This document shows, one piece after another, positions 16,064 to 24,524 of a DNA stretch of 64,000 bases. Location of the stretch: the NCBI RefSeq assembly GCF_003704095.1, contig NW_020844538.1, positions 62,001 to 126,000 on the forward strand, read 5' to 3'. Source of the stretch: Pocillopora damicornis. Its lineage: Eukaryota. The translations under genes were made by a program, and so were the position numbers. The notes beneath the pieces were generated by a model that ran no database searches, was not told where the DNA came from, and saw only the letters and a list, made by a program, of their open reading frames with translations. How positions within the stretch are numbered: position 1 is the stretch's first letter; the number at the start of each line of letters is the position of its first letter.

Positions 16064-16422
16064 CTGAAGTTTTTTTCACTCAAAGATCGAAAAAGAGTTC
16101 GAAGCACTGTAGTCACGAGCCTGCGAAATAAGATCACCGAATGGATGTTTGTTTTTTTGGAGTATAGTCGGGTAAAAGTAAGTCATTTCCGTAGCTACGA
16201 CTTTCGTCCGTCTACCTTCGACTCAACGTCTTGTGCAAAGGTGCGACTTGATTGGTGGAAAACAGTCGGAAATTTCCGGTAGTTCGATTTTAATTCCCTT
16301 CAGAGTAGGGGTAGGTGAACTTTCCTCAAATAAAATTGGTACATTAGCTTACAGCATATCGTCTTGGAATGTCACGGCGGGTCTCTGTAAGTAGATTTTC
16401 TGGAACCTTGAGGTCTCTGAGA
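16064..16422. promoter_or_regulatory. Bidirectional promoter / 5'-UTR region between DHRS1 and DHRS4
   Basis: DHRS1 5'-UTR donor at 16063 and DHRS4 ATG at 16423 are ~360 bp apart; CpG-richer than the flanks; ATTGG (CCAAT) near 16251 and TTCCGGT (ETS-like) near 16274. Confidence 0.6.
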
Positions 16423-19400
16423 ATGAGCACAACTGCAGCCTCGAGTCGCAGCTTAGAAGGAAAAGTCGCTGTTGTAACGGCATCAACAGAGGGGTTGGTT
16501 GATACAAGTGTTCATGCTACATGAATGGGAGCGAAATGGTCTGAAGGCAATTTCAACGTAATTTACAAATGATTTCGAGTCAACTTTAGTTCTTGTGTGT
16601 TTGAATTAAGCATGACGATTCGATGTTATCCGACTTTTCCTGGTCTAGGTAGAAAACAGTGTAGCACAGAAAGAGTTGTTCCCAGCTAGCTTGGATTCAC
16701 TCTATTTTAGAGCTCTTAGTAGGTGGCGAGGGGAGGGAGGTGGGTTGGGTGCTGGTGCTGGTGCAGAGAGGGTCCATGATGTAAAGTTATACTCATTATT
16801 AACACTGATCTCTGCTCAAACTTTTGACACATCAAGTAGTAGGCTTGGATTGTTAGTCCACTCTTTTTAACATCATGTTCCCAAATACAAAAGTGTTTCC
16901 TTTACCATATAGGAGATCTATATCAGATCTTGATGTTTCTGAAGTAACTACTTTTTCTTCTTTTGGAGATCCGTCCACTGAAATTTTAATACTTTCTACC
17001 AGAGTCTTGAATATTACTCTTAATGTCAGGATAGGTCACAAGTCAAAAATATTCCTATAAAGAGATGTTAAACAAAAACATTAATTGCTGAACGTTTTTA
17101 AATAGTGAATTACATATTTTCATTACAAATCAGCACAAGTCACTTGTTGTTTGATTTTTGCTTAGTAATGTGAATAATTACCAAGTATTTTCTTAGGATT
17201 GGGTTTGCCATTGCTAAACAACTTGCTCACGATGGTGCAAAGGTTATGATCAGTAGTCGCAAACAAGACAAAGTTATTGATGCTGTCTCTAAGTTGGAGA
17301 AAGAACAAGGTTGTACAGTGAAGGGAGTTGTGTGCCATGTTGGGAAAACTGAACATCGTAGGAATCTTATCAAAGAGGTACTATTCAAAGTGCTAACTTC
17401 TGATAATGTATGCGGAGAAAACATAGTATTTATAATGAATGATATTTGATAATGATATTACTATGTTTGCAACAAACATTTCTCTCTACAGACATTGGAT
17501 ACTTTTGGAGGCATTGACATCTTGGTTTCAAATGCTGCTGCTAACCCCACATTCGGACCAATCCTGGAGGTAATACTTGACTTAACCATCATTCTAATGT
17601 GAGCATGAAAAGGATTGTTATGATGATAATGATGATGATGACAATGAGAGTAATGGTGATGGGAGCATTTTGATTGCTGTGAAAACCACAGTCATGATGA
17701 TGATAGTAATGTTAAGATGGAAAAAGGGCTAAGATTAAAAGGTTTGAAGCTATACTGCTACCAGTTTCATTTTTTTGCTTGAAAAACAATTGTACTTGTT
17801 TTGTGGTTATATTCATTTTGTAATAGAACACTTTTCTATCAATATAGAAAGTACTATCAGTGACAGGGATCCTTTGGTTTTGTCTTATCTTAATCTGTGA
17901 TTGTATCAGAAAACTAGTAATACTATCTCAACCAGTCAGACTTAAAACTGAAATCAATTGTGACTTAAAAGATCAATCACATTTTCTTATGTTCCATGTG
18001 TTTTTTTGCTTTAATTTTCTTGGATCATGTTCTCATGGGGTTTTTGTGATTTTAATCTTTTTTCATGATTGCATGGCCATTATAAGTGACTTCTTTTGAT
18101 TTTACAAAACCTAATCCTATTGTGCTCTAAAATGAGAGGAACAGCAGGCTTCAAGGAAAAACTATATGTTACAGAATGATAAAAATTGATCATGTTATGA
18201 AGTATGGTCTATACCTATGATATATTTTATTTCAGACACCAGAGGAATCATGGGAAAAGGTATTATCATTTTTGTGAAGATTACATATTGATATATTTTT
18301 TTGGCATACAATGTGCATTAGTTTGTTAATGACATGTTTAAATCAGCTCTTGCCTGCAAGTAGGAATAGAGGGGGCAGAGGAACTAAAAGGGAAAGAGAA
18401 GACAAATGCACTGCTACCTAAATATGTATGGTTGTCAGTAGTTAATATAACAAAGCAATTCAAAGAAGGTGACTCTATGATTGCTTGAAGGTGACATAAA
18501 AATTTTCTTTGAAAAGTAATCTCAAATGAGCCACATGGTTTGAAAATTTTTACAATTATCTGGGGAGGAATATCTGTGGAACCTCTCAAGTCCACAACAA
18601 TTTCATCTTCAATTGGCTCCCTCTGCACACTGCGACGTTCCTTCATTGGAGCCTAACCTTTTACTGTATTATGATAATTAACCAATGAAGGTCAATTTTA
18701 GAGCACTGCTTAGTTAAAAGTGTAACAGACTTTAAAGTCAACTTAAATTGTAAAAACTGACAAAGTATAAATTTCCTGGTCTTTCTGTTCATTTTGTTTT
18801 TTTTGGTCTTTTGTTAATACAGATTTTTGATATCAATGTGAAGTCAGCTTTTCTTCTGGCAAAAGATGTTGTTCCATTTATGAAAAAGAGAGGGTTTGTA
18901 TACTGAGTCCCAATTTGAGATATTGGTATTGGTGGTACCGTAGTTTAGTTAACTCTTTAACCTCTAAGAGTGACTAGCATCTAATTTCCCCTTACAATAT
19001 CACCACTGAATCACAGATTAACGTCATGAGAATAAAGGAAAAGATCACCAATGAAAGAACTCTTGATTGTTAGACAAATTCTCCTTGTCAGCACCTTAGT
19101 AAATATACAGAGAACAGTATGGAGAATATGAATGTTAGGGTTGTTAAGGGTTAATCTTAACTGACTTGTTCCAGTTATCAATAATGAAGATAATTTGAGA
19201 TGCAGTTTATCTAAAGACGAAATTTTGTTGCTTGTTTATTTCAGAGGTGGATCTATAGTGTTTGTTTCATCCATTGCTGGGCTCCAGCCATCCCTGCAGG
19301 TAGATATAACCCTTTTCAAACTTAATTGCCCTACAAGACAATACTTGGTGTGAAAAATATGCTATTCTTATAAGTTTGTTTTAATTTATTCAAACATTGA

Positions 19401-20844
19401 TTAATTTGAGACCCAATCTTCAGTTTTAGTTTTGAGCGGCTTTGAAATACTTTGTTTTTCAAATAGTGTGAAAAGTGTGACTTACTGGTAGTCATACTTA
19501 AATCAAACCCCCAAAAAATTACTTTTAAAGTAACTTTTAAAAAGTTACTTTAAAAAGTTACTTTAAAATTACTTTAGTCAACCTTAAGATGGAAAAATAG
19601 GTAGTTATTTATGACTGAAAAGCATTTTTGATTATTCAGTATCTTAATGCCATATTGGTTTCAGGGTCTTGGTGCTTATAGCGTTAGCAAGACAGCTCTG
19701 CTTGGTTTGACCAAGGTTCTAGCCAATGAATGTGCTCACATGGGAGTGAGGGTGAATTGTGTTGCACCTGGGATCATCAAGACAAAGTTTAGTGGAGCAG
19801 TGAGTATTCAAATGTCAGAGCAATCTACTTTAGTTACATTTGCCCTTTTATTGCAAATAACCATGAGACAAAAATAAAAATGAAATTCATCCAGACGATG
19901 TGACATCTATGAGCCAGAAGAGGATTGTTTTCTGAAATGTAGCGGAAAAGCTGGACATGATAATGTTTGTACTGGTACGTGGGATTGAGACAAAAGAAAA
20001 AGAAAACGAGAAGGGCTGGATAAAAAAATGAACAAAGAAATAAATAAATGCATGATCACTATCATCTGACTTCCTTCCTAGGTGGTTTAAAACTTGACTT
20101 GTATAAGGTAAATAAAAATAGACATTGGGGTGTTATTTTTTGTAGCTTTGGCAAAGTGAGTCCTTAACTGAAGCCGCACTTGCTCAAATTCCCTTGAGGA
20201 GGTAGGAGTTGTGATTTACTGGAAAGAATTACTCAATCTTTTTCTCCCAGGATCTCTTTATTAACCCTTTACACTCTAACATCAGTATACACATTCTCCA
20301 TACTGTTCCCTATGTATTTCCCAAGGCACTGTCAAGGAGAATTTGTCCAACAATCAAGAGCTTCTTTAGTTGCTGATCATTTGCTTTATTCTCATGACCA
20401 TCATGAGCAATTCAGTGGTGATATTGTAAGGAGAAATGAGATACTAATCACTCTCAGGGGTCAAAGGGTTCATTCTCTCTTCTGTCTTTACATTTATTAT
20501 AATTGTAGCTCTGATAAATTGGTAAACAATATCCACATGTCAATGATACTCTATCTTCTCATCACCTTTCTGTTTGATATTGTGGTGATATCAGTGCTGG
20601 AGAAATTACTCATTGATCACTCTTAAGTGAGGGGATGTATACAGAATGATTATAATGTTGTAAACAACAATTTTCAAAATTGATCCAGTTCTGTAAGTGA
20701 GATATGTTGTGTCTGTTTGTTGCTTTCAGGCTTGGTGAGTCAGAGGATATAGGAGGTGCAGTATCTTTTCTATCCTCTGATCAAGCATCGTATATCACTG
20801 GAGAAACTTTAGTTATTGCTGGTGGAATGCATTCAAGACTGTGA
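16423..20844 (+). CDS. DHRS4: Peroxisomal SDR DHRS4; exons 16423-16493, 17197-17377, 17492-17569, 18236-18259, 18823-18893, 19245-19299, 19665-19799, 20146-20201, 20730-20844
   Basis: [59 protein letters not shown] (YxxxK), [22 protein letters not shown], and C-terminal PTS1 -SRL*. Confidence 0.93.
18949..19154. mobile_element. TTAA MITE
   Basis: TTAACTCTTTAACC ... TTAAGGGTTAA. Confidence 0.72.
20261..20472. mobile_element. TTAA MITE (opposite orientation to 18949-19154)
   Basis: TTAACCCTTTACAC ... GGGGTCAAAGGGTTCA. Confidence 0.72.
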
Positions 20845-21265
20845 TTTTAATTTAGATTAAAAAAGGACTAAATTAATAATTACTGTTAGTGATCTCATTG
20901 AAGAGACCTTTGGTAGAATATTTTACCTCACAAGAGAAAGCTTTGAAGGTGATTTTGTGAAAACTTTGGATGTGATGTATGAAGGAAGCACAGTTAAATA
21001 AATGTAAAAAAGGAGAAAACTAATGAAATGAACTTGAGTCACAGCAGACAAGATTTATGTCTTTGACACTGGCTTGTGATGACGTTTATTATTCATTTGG
21101 TCACTTCTGGTGGTGAAAGGGTTACGCTAAGAATCCTACAGTTTTCATACTGGTGTCACTTTCAGTTCCAACAAAAAGAGCCATATAGTAATGAGATGTA
21201 CTTTGACCAAAGTTTTGTATTTTTTCCGAACTTTGGTAATGAACCTGAAACTGTAGAAGCATAGT

Positions 21266-21952
21266 TCACCCCACCATTGTCCTCTTTCGTCCACGCAACC
21301 TCACTTCATCCAGTTTCTTTATTATCTCTCCAGCCTTGTTTGCTTTCCCCTTGTAACTTTCCAAAACAATCTTGAACAGCTGCTCAGTGTTTGGATGAGT
21401 GCTGAGGAAAGCCCTCTCCAAAACGTAAAGATCAACGCCTTTGTCTTCTGTCAGTGATGATATAAAGCTCAGTCCGAAGTCAATCAGAATGATATTTTCA
21501 AACCCAGACTTTATCAAGACGTTTGAAGTGGTCAAATCTCCATGAATACAGTCCACGTTGTGCATTACCGCCAATGTAGAACCAATTTTTTCCGCAAGAC
21601 TTTGTAAACTTTGCTCAGATGCATCAGAAGGGCCATCCAGAAGCTCATTGATGTGATCTCTGGCTGTCACGCAATTTTCGATTTCTTCCATGTAGATACA
21701 ATGAGTAGTGTAATCAACATAATAAACGGCTGGAGTGCAGATTCCTGCTTTCCTACAACGAAGCATTGATCGTACTTCTTGCGTAGTCCTTCGATGGGTG
21801 AGCTTTTCGTCTAGAGAGGGGTGCCTGTAACATTTTGAAAATCTTTCCTTCACTATAGTCTTCTTGGTGTAAAACTTCGTTCTGTAGACACGTGCCTCTG
21901 CGCCTTGCTTCAACAAGCCCCAACCTTCCATTGGAGACGCCATTTTGGACAT
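21266..21952 (-). CDS. TP53RK: EKC/KEOPS complex kinase TP53RK (Bud32/PRPK), intronless CDS, 228 aa (second Met at 21943 is an alternative start)
   Basis: QGAEARVY, KERFSKCYRHPSLD, HGDLTTSN, IDFGLS, EDKGVDLYVLERAFLSTHP, C-terminal RLRGRKRTMVG. Confidence 0.97.
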   Translation of the reverse strand: MSKMASPMEGWGLLKQGAEARVYRTKFYTKKTIVKERFSKCYRHPSLDEKLTHRRTTQEVRSMLRCRKAGICTPAVYYVDYTTHCIYMEEIENCVTARDHINELLDGPSDASEQSLQSLAEKIGSTLAVMHNVDCIHGDLTTSNVLIKSGFENIILIDFGLSFISSLTEDKGVDLYVLERAFLSTHPNTEQLFKIVLESYKGKANKAGEIIKKLDEVRLRGRKRTMVG

Positions 21953-22148
21953 GGTTCACGAGCCTTCGTGCGGTCAGCGTGAGCCTGTGAAGTTCATGCA
22001 CAGTTAACTGTATTCGCCGCCATCTTCGCAACATAGAACCACGGTATTTTCGTTGTAAGTTTAGCTTAATCTCGTCTTATTTTGCCATCGTTTACAGTAT
22101 ACATCATTTCAACTTTGCTTTATCTTCGAAATCCCACAGCACTCCAAG
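21953..22148. promoter_or_regulatory. ~200-bp bidirectional promoter between TP53RK and the microprotein gene
   Basis: Divergent ATGs at 21952 and 22149; YY1-type GCCGCCATCTT at ~22016-22026. Confidence 0.6.
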
Positions 22149-24268
22149 ATGGGTATACTGCTAAGGATGAGGAATCACTTTCAACAAAACAGTCATATAA
22201 TTTACCGAGTGGTTTACGATTTGCGATTCCTGATTGCCGGTTTTCTGGTCACTGGCTACGGAGTTGGAAAGATTGTTTCTGCTTCACAAAAAAGTAAGTT
22301 TATATCTTATTGAAGGGTGTATTTTGATCTTTGAATATTTGACAAGGCATTGATTAGATCTTGTACCGGTTTGAAGGCTGCCTAGACGGGTAGGCAAACT
22401 CGTCGAAAATATAGGACTGTGTGAACAGATCTAATGTGTTGCCATCACATGAATGTTAGAGGAAGAATTTTCGCTTTTTCCCAAAATTATATTCTTTTGG
22501 TTCCGATTTGTTTCGCAGCAGACTCTTCGGGAAAAACACCACAAGAAACGCGGGAATGATATTAATTGGAGCAAGGTTCTTCTCCCGTATAGTCTGCTGG
22601 AAAGCAAATCATAGTATTGCGCTGGAATGAAAAAAGAAATTAATTGGAGCAAGGTTCTTCTCCCGTATAGTCTGCTGGAAAGCAAATCCTAGTATTGCGC
22701 TGTGGATAGCTAGTCAAAGTTTGGTGAAGCACAAAACCAGGGGTAGTTGTTATAAGTCTAGAAGTGAAAAATTTTCTGCAGTTTAGTCTTATTTTAAGTT
22801 GCAAACGTTGTGTTGCTAGTTAAAAAACAAAACAAAACAATGATAGTGCTGTCAAACAGTTTGAAAGTAGGAGACAGGTGAGATATAGAGGTGGCCAGGT
22901 TATAGTGGAAACCATGTTGTTCTATTAGAAAAATTTTACCAAACCTGGGAAATGTTCACCTAAAATGTGCCAGGAATTCCATGAAGGTCATGTGAGTCTA
23001 TGGGTGCATTCTGAATGTGAAATCCAAAAGCATATCTATACCTGTTACTGACAAATTTTGCATTCATTTCTAATCCATAAATGGACAATGGCTGCTTTCC
23101 AAATATTTTTTGATGTCTCTTCAATAATTTTACAGTTTTTCATTAGCACTTATGGTTTAATGAGGTAAAAATAGAGGGCTTAGGATGGCAGGAAAGTGGT
23201 GATTTGGCCTGTTAACTGGCTCTTTTAAAGAGCTCTGAGCTATGCTATGATTATGGTAGTTTAAATAACTATTTGATATCTCTTCTCTTTTTCTCCAGAG
23301 GAAACTGGTAAAAAAGGAGGTAAGCATAGAAAACATTCTTTTCTTTCAGTACTGGTGTTATGAATGATATTCTATGAAAGATTTGAATCTTTTCAATGAA
23401 AGCTGTTTCAGAGCAAATTTTGGGTATTTAGTAGTGAAGTGCCTAAAAGTGTTAAGGGAGGCCTTGGTAACTGGGCTGGTAGGTCAGGGGGGTATAATGA
23501 TAAGTTTGGGTTAAAAAGTCCATTTTATTGCTTCAACGTAAAATGAGCAGTTACACATTCAAAATATGGTATAAAAAACTGACTATAACCCAAATGCACA
23601 CATCATTGTATAATCATTAGGATCATGCTCATTGTGACAAGTTCATTTGCATGTGCCTATGTTCTCTGCTTCCATACAGCCTGGTAATTTATGCCGGCAT
23701 ACTACTAACAGTATTTTGCCCTCTGTTCATGTGAAAAGAAAGTCAACCAGATAATATTTCCATTCAGCTGCTATTTGTATTAGTATTAAATTTCAGCTTG
23801 CCTCCTTTAGTTAACCTCCCTGTGATATTTATCAGTAGTTTCATCCTGGTGATTAAGAGAACTTGTTTATTGGAGATAATTTTGAGTTGTATAACTAAGA
23901 TCTTGGTCCCAAAAGTCAAAATATCAGCCACCCTGTCTATTGGGTATTGAAAGATTCCCAAAGATGACGGAGATAAAGTGAGATCTTAAATACTAAGTCA
24001 CTTGTGTGTATGTTGATAAAGGTCACCCATAGAGGCCCATGCTCTATTCATTTTATACTTTCAGCAAAACTAATTGATGAGGAAATTCTTCTTTCTCTGT
24101 AAATTAAATGACAAGAGGACAAATTAGGAGAAGAAAACTTCTCCATTTTTATGTCCTTTTAGTATTTGCAAGTAAATCAGCCAAGTTATGTTACATAGCC
24201 AATTTTTACACTGTCTAAGAGAGAGATTTAAAAAATATATACTCTTTTCATTAGGTGGTCACCACTGA
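22149..24268 (+). CDS. ATP5MJ: 59-aa single-TM microprotein, probable mitochondrial ATP synthase subunit j (6.8-kDa proteolipid / Atp18); exons 22149-22293, 23299-23319, 24255-24268
   Basis: Spliced product MGILLRMRNHFQQNSHIIYRVVYDLRFLIAGFLVTGYGVGKIVSASQKKETGKKGGGHH*. Strong sites (A|GTAAGT, TTCTCCAG, G|GTAAGC, TTTTCATTAG), both introns phase 1, AATAAA at 24312. Size, single TM and terminal GHH resemble vertebrate 6.8PL (recalled). Confidence 0.72.
22561..22702. repeat. Two-copy 64-bp direct repeat (period 78, 1 mismatch)
   Basis: ATTAATTGGAGCAAGGTTCTTCTCCCGTATAGTCTGCTGGAAAGCAAATC(A/C)TAGTATTGCGCTG at 22561 and 22639. Confidence 0.95.
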
Positions 24269-24524
24269 AGTTTGACAACAAAATACAAGGCTTCTTCAGC
24301 CTTTGTTTCTAAATAAAGGAGCTGGATGTAAGATTGGGAGACTCCTGAGGATGTTTTCTTGGAGACTACTTTTGCTTTGTATTTTGGACTGAATTGACTT
24401 TGTGGTTGAAATTAAAATGTGATCTTTGTTTAGAAGATAGTGTTTACCTCTGCTTCCTGCCTGCTGTGTACTTAACCTGTAACTCACACTGCACAGGCAT
24501 GTCCACTCATCCGAGATCTGAGAC

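What the first reader, a model, noticed from the sequence alone, without database searches (positions are those of the whole stretch)
22149..24317. Hidden 59-aa microprotein that appears to bridge fungal Atp18 (subunit j) and vertebrate 6.8PL/ATP5MJ
Seen: a three-exon gene invisible to the ORF track, with a 21-nt micro-exon and a 14-nt last coding exon, encoding MGILLRMRNHFQQNSHIIYRVVYDLRFLIAGFLVTGYGVGKIVSASQKKETGKKGGGHH. Recalled from memory: human 6.8PL is 58 aa, has ..[22 protein letters not shown].. and ends in GHH; yeast Atp18 is 59 aa with ..LKVYWPFFVAGAAVYYGMSK.. This protein has the yeast-like F-hydrophobic-hydrophobic-AG...YGxxK TM and the vertebrate GHH tail. 6.8PL has been regarded as largely vertebrate-restricted, and its orthology with fungal j rests mainly on structural and functional arguments. 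An early-branching animal intermediate would supply sequence evidence.
Basis: partly seen in the sequence, partly recalled or inferred. Interest (0 to 1): 0.78.

Follow-up and report, generated by a model that had tools for sequence, protein, structure and literature searches.

The report
Coral ATP synthase subunit j candidate
A real, spliced and conserved coral gene that gene finders miss or mis-model encodes a 59-residue single-helix membrane protein that is most likely the coral version of subunit j (6.8PL/ATP5MJ) of mitochondrial ATP synthase, a subunit whose sequence has not been identified in invertebrates.

Summary
All three coding exons have canonical GT-AG borders. The exon 1 to micro-exon junction appears in RNA contigs of four studies. 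A related coral's spliced RNA contigs carry the whole 59-codon frame, including a 21-nt micro-exon. The transcript is longer than described: it has a 5' non-coding exon and a poly(A) site at about 24435.

The gene is single copy and under purifying selection (dN/dS 0.15-0.33). It sits head to head with a Bud32/TP53RK-like kinase in three coral lineages. Public gene calls read through its introns.

The identity is less firm. Neither Pfam model (fungal j PF04911, vertebrate 6.8PL PF08039) reaches threshold, and the window's own protein hits nothing. However, six of seven acroporid-type orthologues hit PF04911, and only PF04911 out of 24,736 models (E 0.004-0.13), over the membrane helix. Eight hydrophobic control pieces never hit it.

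The coral genome has recognisable genes for subunits a, e, f, g and k, but none for j. The invariant GGGHH end matches the GHH end of bovine and pig j.

Verdict: a probable coral subunit j (about 0.75). The link to fungal j has weak statistical support. The link to vertebrate 6.8PL rests on the tail and on motifs compared by eye. The scan had not noted this gene before.

The parts
22016..22054 (+). 5' non-coding exon (its start is approximate: it is the furthest upstream base of a spliced RNA contig)
   Evidence: Contig X9 record 25 joins 22016-22054 to 22140-22293. The joint 22054->22140 (GT..AG) appears in runs X9 and X13. There is no ATG in it.
22055..22139 (+). 85-nt intron in the 5' UTR. 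It is retained or bypassed in some samples: contig X1 record 1 runs unbroken from 22104.
   Evidence: tables 5 and 8; GTAAGT...CACAG borders
22140..22293 (+). First coding exon. The ATG is at 22149. It encodes residues 1-48 plus one base (phase 1): the N-terminal basic amphipathic helix and the transmembrane helix.
   Evidence: AF2 model with helices 2-13 and 15-50
22294..23298 (+). Intron 1 of the coding region (1005 nt). It holds a roughly 64-nt direct repeat at about 22562-22625 and 22640-22703.
   Evidence: Joint 22293->23299 in 4 RNA runs; repeat seen
23299..23319 (+). 21-nt micro-exon, phase 1 to phase 1, encoding the Lys/Gly-rich linker
   Evidence: A 21-nt counterpart sits between the two flanking exons in L001 (16 of 21 bases identical by my count). 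There is a 21-nt candidate with a strong polypyrimidine tract in a third coral genome at L025:7427.
23320..24254 (+). Intron 2 of the coding region (935 nt)
   Evidence: GTAAGC...TTAG borders; the length arithmetic of the 79-nt spliced contig and the L001 colinearity
24255..24435 (+). Last exon. It has 11 coding bases (G-G-H-H with the carried-over base), the stop TGA at 24266-24268, and the 3' UTR with AATAAA at 24312 and ATTAAA at 24411. The poly(A) tail starts at about 24435.
   Evidence: contigs 24253-24435 in all four runs and a loose poly(A) end at 24435 in X9
21953..22015 (.). Short shared upstream region between the microprotein gene and the divergent kinase gene (inferred bidirectional promoter)
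   Evidence: The kinase ORF is at 21266-21952 on the - strand. The same head-to-head pair is found in L001-L008 and L025.

Best explanation
The gene encodes the coral orthologue of mitochondrial ATP synthase subunit j (fungal Atp18 or i/j; vertebrate 6.8PL/ATP5MJ). By analogy with the solved bovine and yeast enzymes, the 59-residue protein would sit in the inner membrane in three parts. (1) The basic N-terminal amphipathic helix (Arg6 invariant, Arg/Lys at position 8) lies on the matrix leaflet, where bovine jLys-8 helps hold a cardiolipin. (2) The single transmembrane helix (about residues 22-43) packs against ATP6 and the b/e/f/g wedge and locks ATP6 in place late in assembly. (3) The Lys/Gly-rich tail ending in GGGHH sits in the intermembrane space near the monomer-monomer interface. 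Shown here: the gene, its splicing, its conservation and selection, the helix architecture (predicted), the weak specific match to the j profile, and the absence of any other j candidate. Inferred: mitochondrial location, membership of complex V, topology and role.
For: (1): six of seven acroporid-type orthologues (P0004-P0009) hit PF04911 ATP-synt_J as their only Pfam family among 24,736 models. E is 0.0043-0.13 at 12-17 bits. The match is always residues 23-47 to profile positions 13-35 of 51, which is the membrane helix. (2): eight hydrophobic or small mitochondrial control pieces from this coral never hit PF04911; the model rings in only 1 of 14 control genomes, and there below the cut-off. 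(3) These orthologues are tied to the window protein by E 1.8e-5 in 1.84 billion proteins and by profile E 1e-15 to 1e-27. They also share the same exon 1 donor phase and the same kinase neighbour. (4) Vacancy: the genome has over-threshold matches for a, k/DAPIT, e, g and f but none for j with either model. Yet j is present in fungi, in mammals and, as density, in brine shrimp. (5) The tail GGGHH is identical in corals that are only 47% identical overall, with synonymous codon changes. Bovine and pig j end in GHH. (6) Size is 56-59 aa, with one N-terminal helix plus one long helix, and basic residues on both sides as in bovine j. (7) Language-model neighbours: a PF04911 cluster is first for P0001 (0.87). 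For P0002 the neighbours are a PF04911 cluster second (0.89, 171 shared features) and the plant 6-kDa ATP synthase subunit third, and the 6.8PL cluster ranks 15th (P0001) and 18th (P0002). (8) dN/dS is 0.15-0.33. Exon contigs have far higher k-mer depth than intron contigs in poly(A) RNA of four studies.
Against: No sequence reaches the Pfam gathering score of either family. The window's own protein, P0001, P0002 and P0003 hit nothing at E<=10. PF08039 never hits. Coral profiles find no j chain among PDB sequences, and neither do single sequences. The six PF04911 hits come from close relatives, so they count as roughly one observation. Chance hits at E about 0.1 do occur in such scans. Membrane helices rich in Gly, Ala and aromatics resemble each other easily. 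The atlas scores are under 0.9 (leads only), and for P0002 the first neighbour is a different, poorly named chordate cluster. There is no experimental localisation.
Confidence: 0.75

Rival explanations
1. It is a stony-coral-restricted single-pass membrane microprotein unrelated to ATP synthase. For example, it could be another small subunit or assembly factor of the respiratory chain (SMIM4/UQCC5-like or similar), or an ER or plasma-membrane micropeptide. Its likeness to j would then be the convergent look of short Gly/Ala/aromatic membrane helices.
For: Detectable relatives are all corals. No family reaches threshold. For P0002 the top atlas neighbour is a 57-aa chordate cluster in which 14% of members carry UPF0640, and the other neighbours are small subunits of complexes I and III.
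Against: PF15114 and all other small-protein models give no hit, even at E<=10, whereas PF04911 does, repeatedly. The GHH end and the vacancy for j would both have to be coincidences.
Confidence: 0.2
2. It is not a functional protein-coding gene. The transcript would be a non-coding or promoter-associated RNA of the divergent kinase gene, and the ORF would be fortuitous.
For: The ORF is very short, it shares a roughly 60-bp upstream region with the kinase gene, and no family reaches threshold.
Against: The frame is kept through two introns and a 21-nt micro-exon in corals that are only 47% identical. dN/dS is 0.15-0.33. The last five residues are invariant with synonymous changes. The transcript is spliced and polyadenylated, with exon contigs far deeper than intron contigs.
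Confidence: 0.03

Closest known systems
Fungal ATP synthase subunit j / i (Atp18; Pfam PF04911 ATP-synt_J)
   Same: Length is similar (59 aa in yeast, 56-59 here). Both have a single membrane helix preceded by a short basic N-terminal stretch. There are sub-threshold but specific profile matches over the helix. By eye, against the yeast sequence printed in PMC7519299 SI, the pattern F-h-h-A-G ... Y-G-h-S/G-K is shared (yeast YGMSK; coral YGVGK, or YYGISK in P0007).
   Different: Scores are 12-17 bits against a cut-off of 24. The coral helix is one or two residues longer. The yeast tail is longer, unrelated in sequence and does not end in GHH. The window's own protein does not hit the model.
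Vertebrate 6.8 kDa proteolipid, 6.8PL / MP68 / ATP5MJ (Pfam PF08039 Mit_proteolip)
   Same: Both are 58-60 aa with one membrane helix. Both have basic residues at positions 6-8 of the N-terminal helix, a Lys-rich tail with small residues, and the identical C-terminal G-H-H. By eye, coral YGVGKIVSA compares with bovine YIVYKIRSA at the exit of the helix.
   Different: No PF08039 hit for any of ten coral sequences, nor at the locus in the genome scan. The rest of the helix and the tail differ. Whether vertebrate genes share the phase-1 micro-exon was not tested.
The unidentified '6.8PL' density of brine shrimp (Artemia franciscana) ATP synthase
   Same: It shows that an invertebrate enzyme has a subunit in the j position whose gene is missing from the annotation (PMC12325954). 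This is the same situation as in corals, where gene callers read through the introns.
   Different: No sequence is known for it (it was built as poly-Ala), so nothing can be compared.

Membership tests
ATP-synt_J (PF04911, fungal subunit j/Atp18) | Score over the Pfam gathering cut-off (24 bits) | tested here: not met
   The best is 17 bits, E 0.0043 (P0008). The window exon 1, P0001, P0002 and P0003 give no hit. There is no hit at the locus in the genome scan.
ATP-synt_J (PF04911, fungal subunit j/Atp18) | Specific similarity of the membrane helix to the family profile, above what controls give | tested here: met
   6 of 7 acroporid-type orthologues hit only this model, always residues 23-47 to profile positions 13-35. 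0 of 8 hydrophobic controls hit it.
ATP-synt_J / 6.8PL (subunit j in general) | About 60 residues, an N-terminal amphipathic helix plus one transmembrane helix, and a short C-terminal tail | tested here: met
   56-59 aa. The AF2 model has helices 2-13 and 15-50 and a disordered tail, mean pLDDT 69.
ATP-synt_J / 6.8PL (subunit j in general) | Physical presence in complex V next to ATP6 and the wedge | not testable with these tools
   This needs complexome MS or cryo-EM. The one modelling job gave no answer (see Tried and rejected).
ATP-synt_J / 6.8PL (subunit j in general) | It is the only j candidate in a genome that has the other supernumerary subunits | tested here: met
   a, k, e, g and f are found over their cut-offs. 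Neither j model finds anything else credible. The gene is single copy. Caveat: six-frame exon-wise scans can miss small split genes.
Mit_proteolip (PF08039, vertebrate 6.8PL/ATP5MJ) | Match to the family profile | tested here: not met
   No hit at E<=10 for ten coral sequences. The only genome hit (E 3.5) lies elsewhere, inside a 372-aa frame.
Mit_proteolip (PF08039, vertebrate 6.8PL/ATP5MJ) | C-terminal G-H-H | tested here: met
   Window, P0001 and P0002 end in GGGHH. Bovine and pig j end in GHH.
Mit_proteolip (PF08039, vertebrate 6.8PL/ATP5MJ) | Shared exon-intron structure with vertebrate ATP5MJ | not tested
   No vertebrate genome is within reach of these tools, and human sequence is out of bounds here.

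The most novel reading that the evidence does not exclude
The coral protein is a true sequence intermediate. It would show that fungal j (PF04911) and vertebrate 6.8PL (PF08039) are one ancient opisthokont family. It would also show that invertebrate j genes exist widely but are hidden by their tiny split structure (a 48-codon exon, a 21-nt micro-exon and an 11-nt coding end). The coral family would then be the seed for finding the missing j of other invertebrates, including the poly-Ala chain of the brine shrimp structure.
Probability: 0.55. Interest if true: 0.6.

Novelty: new member of a known kind. Interest (0 to 1): 0.5.

Why it matters
Subunit j locks ATP6 into ATP synthase and sits at the dimer interface (PMC13434801; PMC7519299). 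Even so, it is the one supernumerary subunit with no recognised sequence outside fungi and vertebrates. A 2015 survey called 6.8PL vertebrate-restricted. In 2025 the brine shrimp structure had density for it but no sequence. Bovine and yeast j are only 14.9% identical, so their orthology rests on structure. A cnidarian gene that leans towards the fungal profile while keeping the vertebrate GHH end would give the first sequence thread between the two families. It would also give a practical search image (three tiny coding exons, phase-1 junctions) for annotators and proteomics databases. It is not a new kind of system, because the presence of a j subunit in animals was expected.

Tried and rejected
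Exon 1 was searched by reference, and the natural full-length orthologues P0001 and P0002 stood in for the whole protein. The micro-exon (7 codons) and the last coding piece (4 codons) are too short for any search tool.

2. Bovine, pig and yeast j sequences are printed in the supplement of PMC7519299 (machine-read with at least one dropped letter). They have no reference, so they were not handed to any aligner or script. They were compared by eye only, so no score or shuffle statistic exists for coral versus bovine or yeast j.

3. Pfam on the window exon 1, P0001, P0002 and P0003: nothing.

4. PDB sequence searches with single sequences and with two profiles: only His-tag or chance matches.

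5. Foldseek of the AF2 model against the PDB: no match, as expected for a helix.

6. Complex prediction of coral ATP6 (211 aa, table-11 open part) with P0001: no answer, score 0.00, controls not run. This is neither for nor against binding.

7. Exhaustive phmmer with P0001 found only one relative. Word searches found only corals. The metagenome locus scan found nothing.

8. ATP8 could not be located with PF00895, so it was not used.

9. Rfam on the locus: nothing credible.

10. The last exon was not found within the 5 kb fetched downstream in L025.

Full report
WHAT IS THERE

The window comes from a stony coral. Earlier notes on the same genome say so. The RNA runs that hold the stretch are labelled coral metagenome. 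The only named relative is an Acropora cervicornis protein.

- An ATG exon ends AAAA|GTAAGT at 22293 (145 coding bases, phase 1).
- A 21-nt micro-exon, 23299-23319, lies between CTCCAG| and |GTAAGC.
- A last coding piece starts at 24255 after CATTAG| and reads GT GGT CAC CAC TGA.

The mechanical ORF is only 54 codons, because it reads through into intron 1. This explains why the gene is invisible on an ORF track.

IS IT TRANSCRIBED AND SPLICED THIS WAY

Yes. Contigs of four poly(A)/oligo-dT RNA runs from four studies were laid on 22000-24500.
- All four show the joint 22293->23299 with GT..AG ends.
- Exon contigs have k-mer depths of about 250-1900, against 5-17 for intron contigs of the same runs.
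- A 79-nt contig has exactly the length of 30 nt of exon 1 + 21 nt + 28 nt of the last exon. It shares its last 30 letters with the contig that starts at 24253, because the micro-exon ends in AG, as does intron 2.
- The second junction was not listed as a joint by the tool, because the micro-exon is so short.

The second junction is shown directly in a related coral. Eight Logan RNA contigs (L001-L008) carry an uninterrupted 59-codon ORF (P0001, 87% identical to exon 1). They are colinear with the window: L001 2093-2243 matches 22143-22293, then comes a 21-nt piece that is 16/21 identical to the micro-exon, then 24255 onward.

- There is a 5' non-coding exon (about 22016-22054) and an 85-nt UTR intron (joint 22054->22140 in two runs).
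- The poly(A) tail begins at about 24435, after ATTAAA at 24411, not at the AATAAA at 24312.

IS IT A PROTEIN-CODING GENE

- The gene is single copy in the assembly.
- An exhaustive phmmer search with P0001 of 1.84 billion representatives found one relative: P0002, 56 aa, E 1.8e-5.
- A profile word search added seven more, all corals. Every one of those seven is a mis-called product that reads through intron 1 or intron 2. One example is A. cervicornis P5673_017787, called at 92 aa.
- P0001 and P0002 are only 47% identical. They keep M1, R6, the block Y-D-x-R-F-L-x-A-G-F, T, G-V/I, K-I, and an identical GGGHH end.
- dN/dS over exon 1 is 0.33 (window vs L001) and 0.15 (two acroporid-type genomes).
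- The tail codons differ synonymously: GGT CAC CAC, GGT CAT CAT, GGA CAT CAT.
- In a third coral genome (L025) exon 1 ends at the same phase with AAAA|GTAAGT. A 21-nt micro-exon candidate follows 2.3 kb downstream.
- In the window, in L001-L008 and in L025, the gene lies head to head with an intronless 226-228-aa kinase of the RIO1/Kdo/Pkinase type (Bud32/TP53RK-like). The two start codons are about 100-240 bp apart.

WHAT IS IT

Negative results first.
- Pfam gives nothing at E<=10 for the window exon 1, P0001, P0002 or P0003.
- Neither PF08039 (6.8PL) nor PF04911 (subunit j) finds this locus in a six-frame scan of the genome.
- PDB sequence searches with single proteins and with two profiles find no ATP synthase chain.
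- Foldseek with the model finds nothing.

Positive results.

(a) The other orthologues were scanned one by one. Six of seven (P0004-P0009) hit PF04911 ATP-synt_J, and nothing else among 24,736 models. E is 0.0043 to 0.13 (12-17 bits; cut-off 24). The match is always the membrane helix (residues 23-47) to profile positions 13-35 of 51.

These six are close relatives, so they amount to about one observation, and E of about 0.1 is the level at which chance hits appear (one search shows three). Eight hydrophobic or small mitochondrial control pieces from this coral never touched PF04911, while each hit its own family.

(b) Vacancy. The same genome has over-threshold matches for:
- ATP6 (145 bits)
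- k/DAPIT (29 bits)
- e (25 bits)
- g (73 bits)
- f (31 bits)

Subunit j is the only membrane subunit without a recognisable gene.

(c) Architecture. The proteins are 56-59 aa. AF2 predicts helix 2-13 and helix 15-50 with a floppy tail (pLDDT 69). Basic residues lie on both sides of the helix.

(d) The GHH end. Bovine 6.8PL peptides end ...AHGHH. The supplement of Spikes et al. prints bovine and pig j ending in GHH.

(e) Language-model neighbours.
- For P0001 a PF04911 cluster is first (0.87) and the 6.8PL cluster 15th (0.85).
- For P0002 a PF04911 cluster is second (0.89, 171 shared features), the plant 6-kDa ATP synthase subunit third, and 6.8PL 18th (0.86).
- The remaining neighbours are small subunits of respiratory complexes.
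- All scores are 0.90 or less, so these are leads only.

COMPARISON BY EYE

This comparison has no statistics. The printed bovine, pig and yeast sequences have no reference, so they were not given to any tool.
- Position 37 is Tyr in the window protein, yeast and bovine. The Lys four places later is present in all coral sequences and in yeast and bovine. The motif reads YGVGK in the window protein, YGMSK in yeast and YIVYK in bovine. This register agrees with the bovine-yeast alignment printed in the supplement.
- One acroporid-type orthologue has YYGISK against yeast YYGMSK. Before it comes F-L-I-A-G against yeast F-F-V-A-G, with one extra residue in the coral helix.
- Towards bovine j the helix exit reads YGVGKIVSA against YIVYKIRSA.

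So the coral proteins do look intermediate. Only the fungal side has any computed support.

HOW IT MOST LIKELY WORKS

This section is inferred from the bovine and human work.
- Subunit j is added with ATP6 and ATP8 late in assembly and "locks ATP6 in place".
- Its N-terminal amphipathic helix lies on the matrix leaflet, where jLys-8 helps bind a cardiolipin.
- The two j helices face each other at the monomer-monomer interface (PMC7519299).
- Its C-terminal Lys49 cross-links to e, f and k in the intermembrane space (PMC4505582).

The coral protein has the matching elements: an invariant Arg6 and Arg/Lys8, one helix, and a Lys-rich tail. I therefore expect the same placement and role. Nothing here shows location or binding.

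KNOWN OR NEW

- Lee et al. 2015 stated that 6.8PL is restricted to vertebrates.
- He et al. 2018 proposed that it is the functional orthologue of yeast i/j (via PMC6131620).
- Spikes et al. 2020 adopted the name j, at 14.9% identity.
- Paper searches for invertebrate or cnidarian j found nothing.
- One atlas cluster of chordate-labelled proteins carries PF04911, so some animal j-like entries may already sit unnoticed in databases.

I file the finding as a new, divergent member of a known kind. It has practical value as a search image. It is not a new system.
Noticed in passing
window 21266-21952 (- strand): There is an intronless 228-aa atypical kinase (Pkinase, RIO1 and Kdo models; Bud32/TP53RK-like). 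It lies head to head with the microprotein gene. Its start codon is about 60 bp from the microprotein's 5' exon. The pairing is kept in a related coral's RNA contigs (L001-L008) and in a third coral genome (L025).
   Followed up: partly
window 16282-20900 (+ strand): A multi-exon short-chain dehydrogenase (SDR) gene lies upstream. RNA contigs of the related coral run from its spliced exons through its 3' end into the kinase gene on the opposite strand. The 3' ends of the two transcripts therefore overlap or abut.
   Followed up: no
window about 22562-22625 and 22640-22703 (intron 1): A roughly 64-nt direct repeat occurs twice, 78 nt apart. Short RNA contigs over it have k-mer depth 90-230, against 10-17 in the rest of the intron, so the element is probably repeated or expressed elsewhere in the genome. 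Rfam and TRF gave nothing.
   Followed up: partly
window 23627-23718 (intron 2): Contigs from other places join here: there are loose ends on both sides, a 34-nt skip at 23647->23682, and raised depth. This suggests a short dispersed repeat.
   Followed up: no
G000:C1453:105784-106005 (L030): The coral subunit f exon matches both the animal model (WRW, PF10206) and the fungal model (F1F0-ATPsyn_F, PF10791) over their cut-offs. For subunit f, then, a cnidarian sequence already bridges the two family definitions.
   Followed up: no
L012 (G000:C4393, mitochondrial contig): ATP6 is open for 211 codons under table 11. ATP8 was not found with PF00895 anywhere on the mitochondrial contig; only chance-level nuclear hits appeared.
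   Followed up: no
P0003-P0009 (public coral gene calls): All seven public predictions of this gene in coral genomes read through intron 1 or intron 2 and carry junk C-termini (47-94 aa). They include A. cervicornis P5673_017787.
   Followed up: yes
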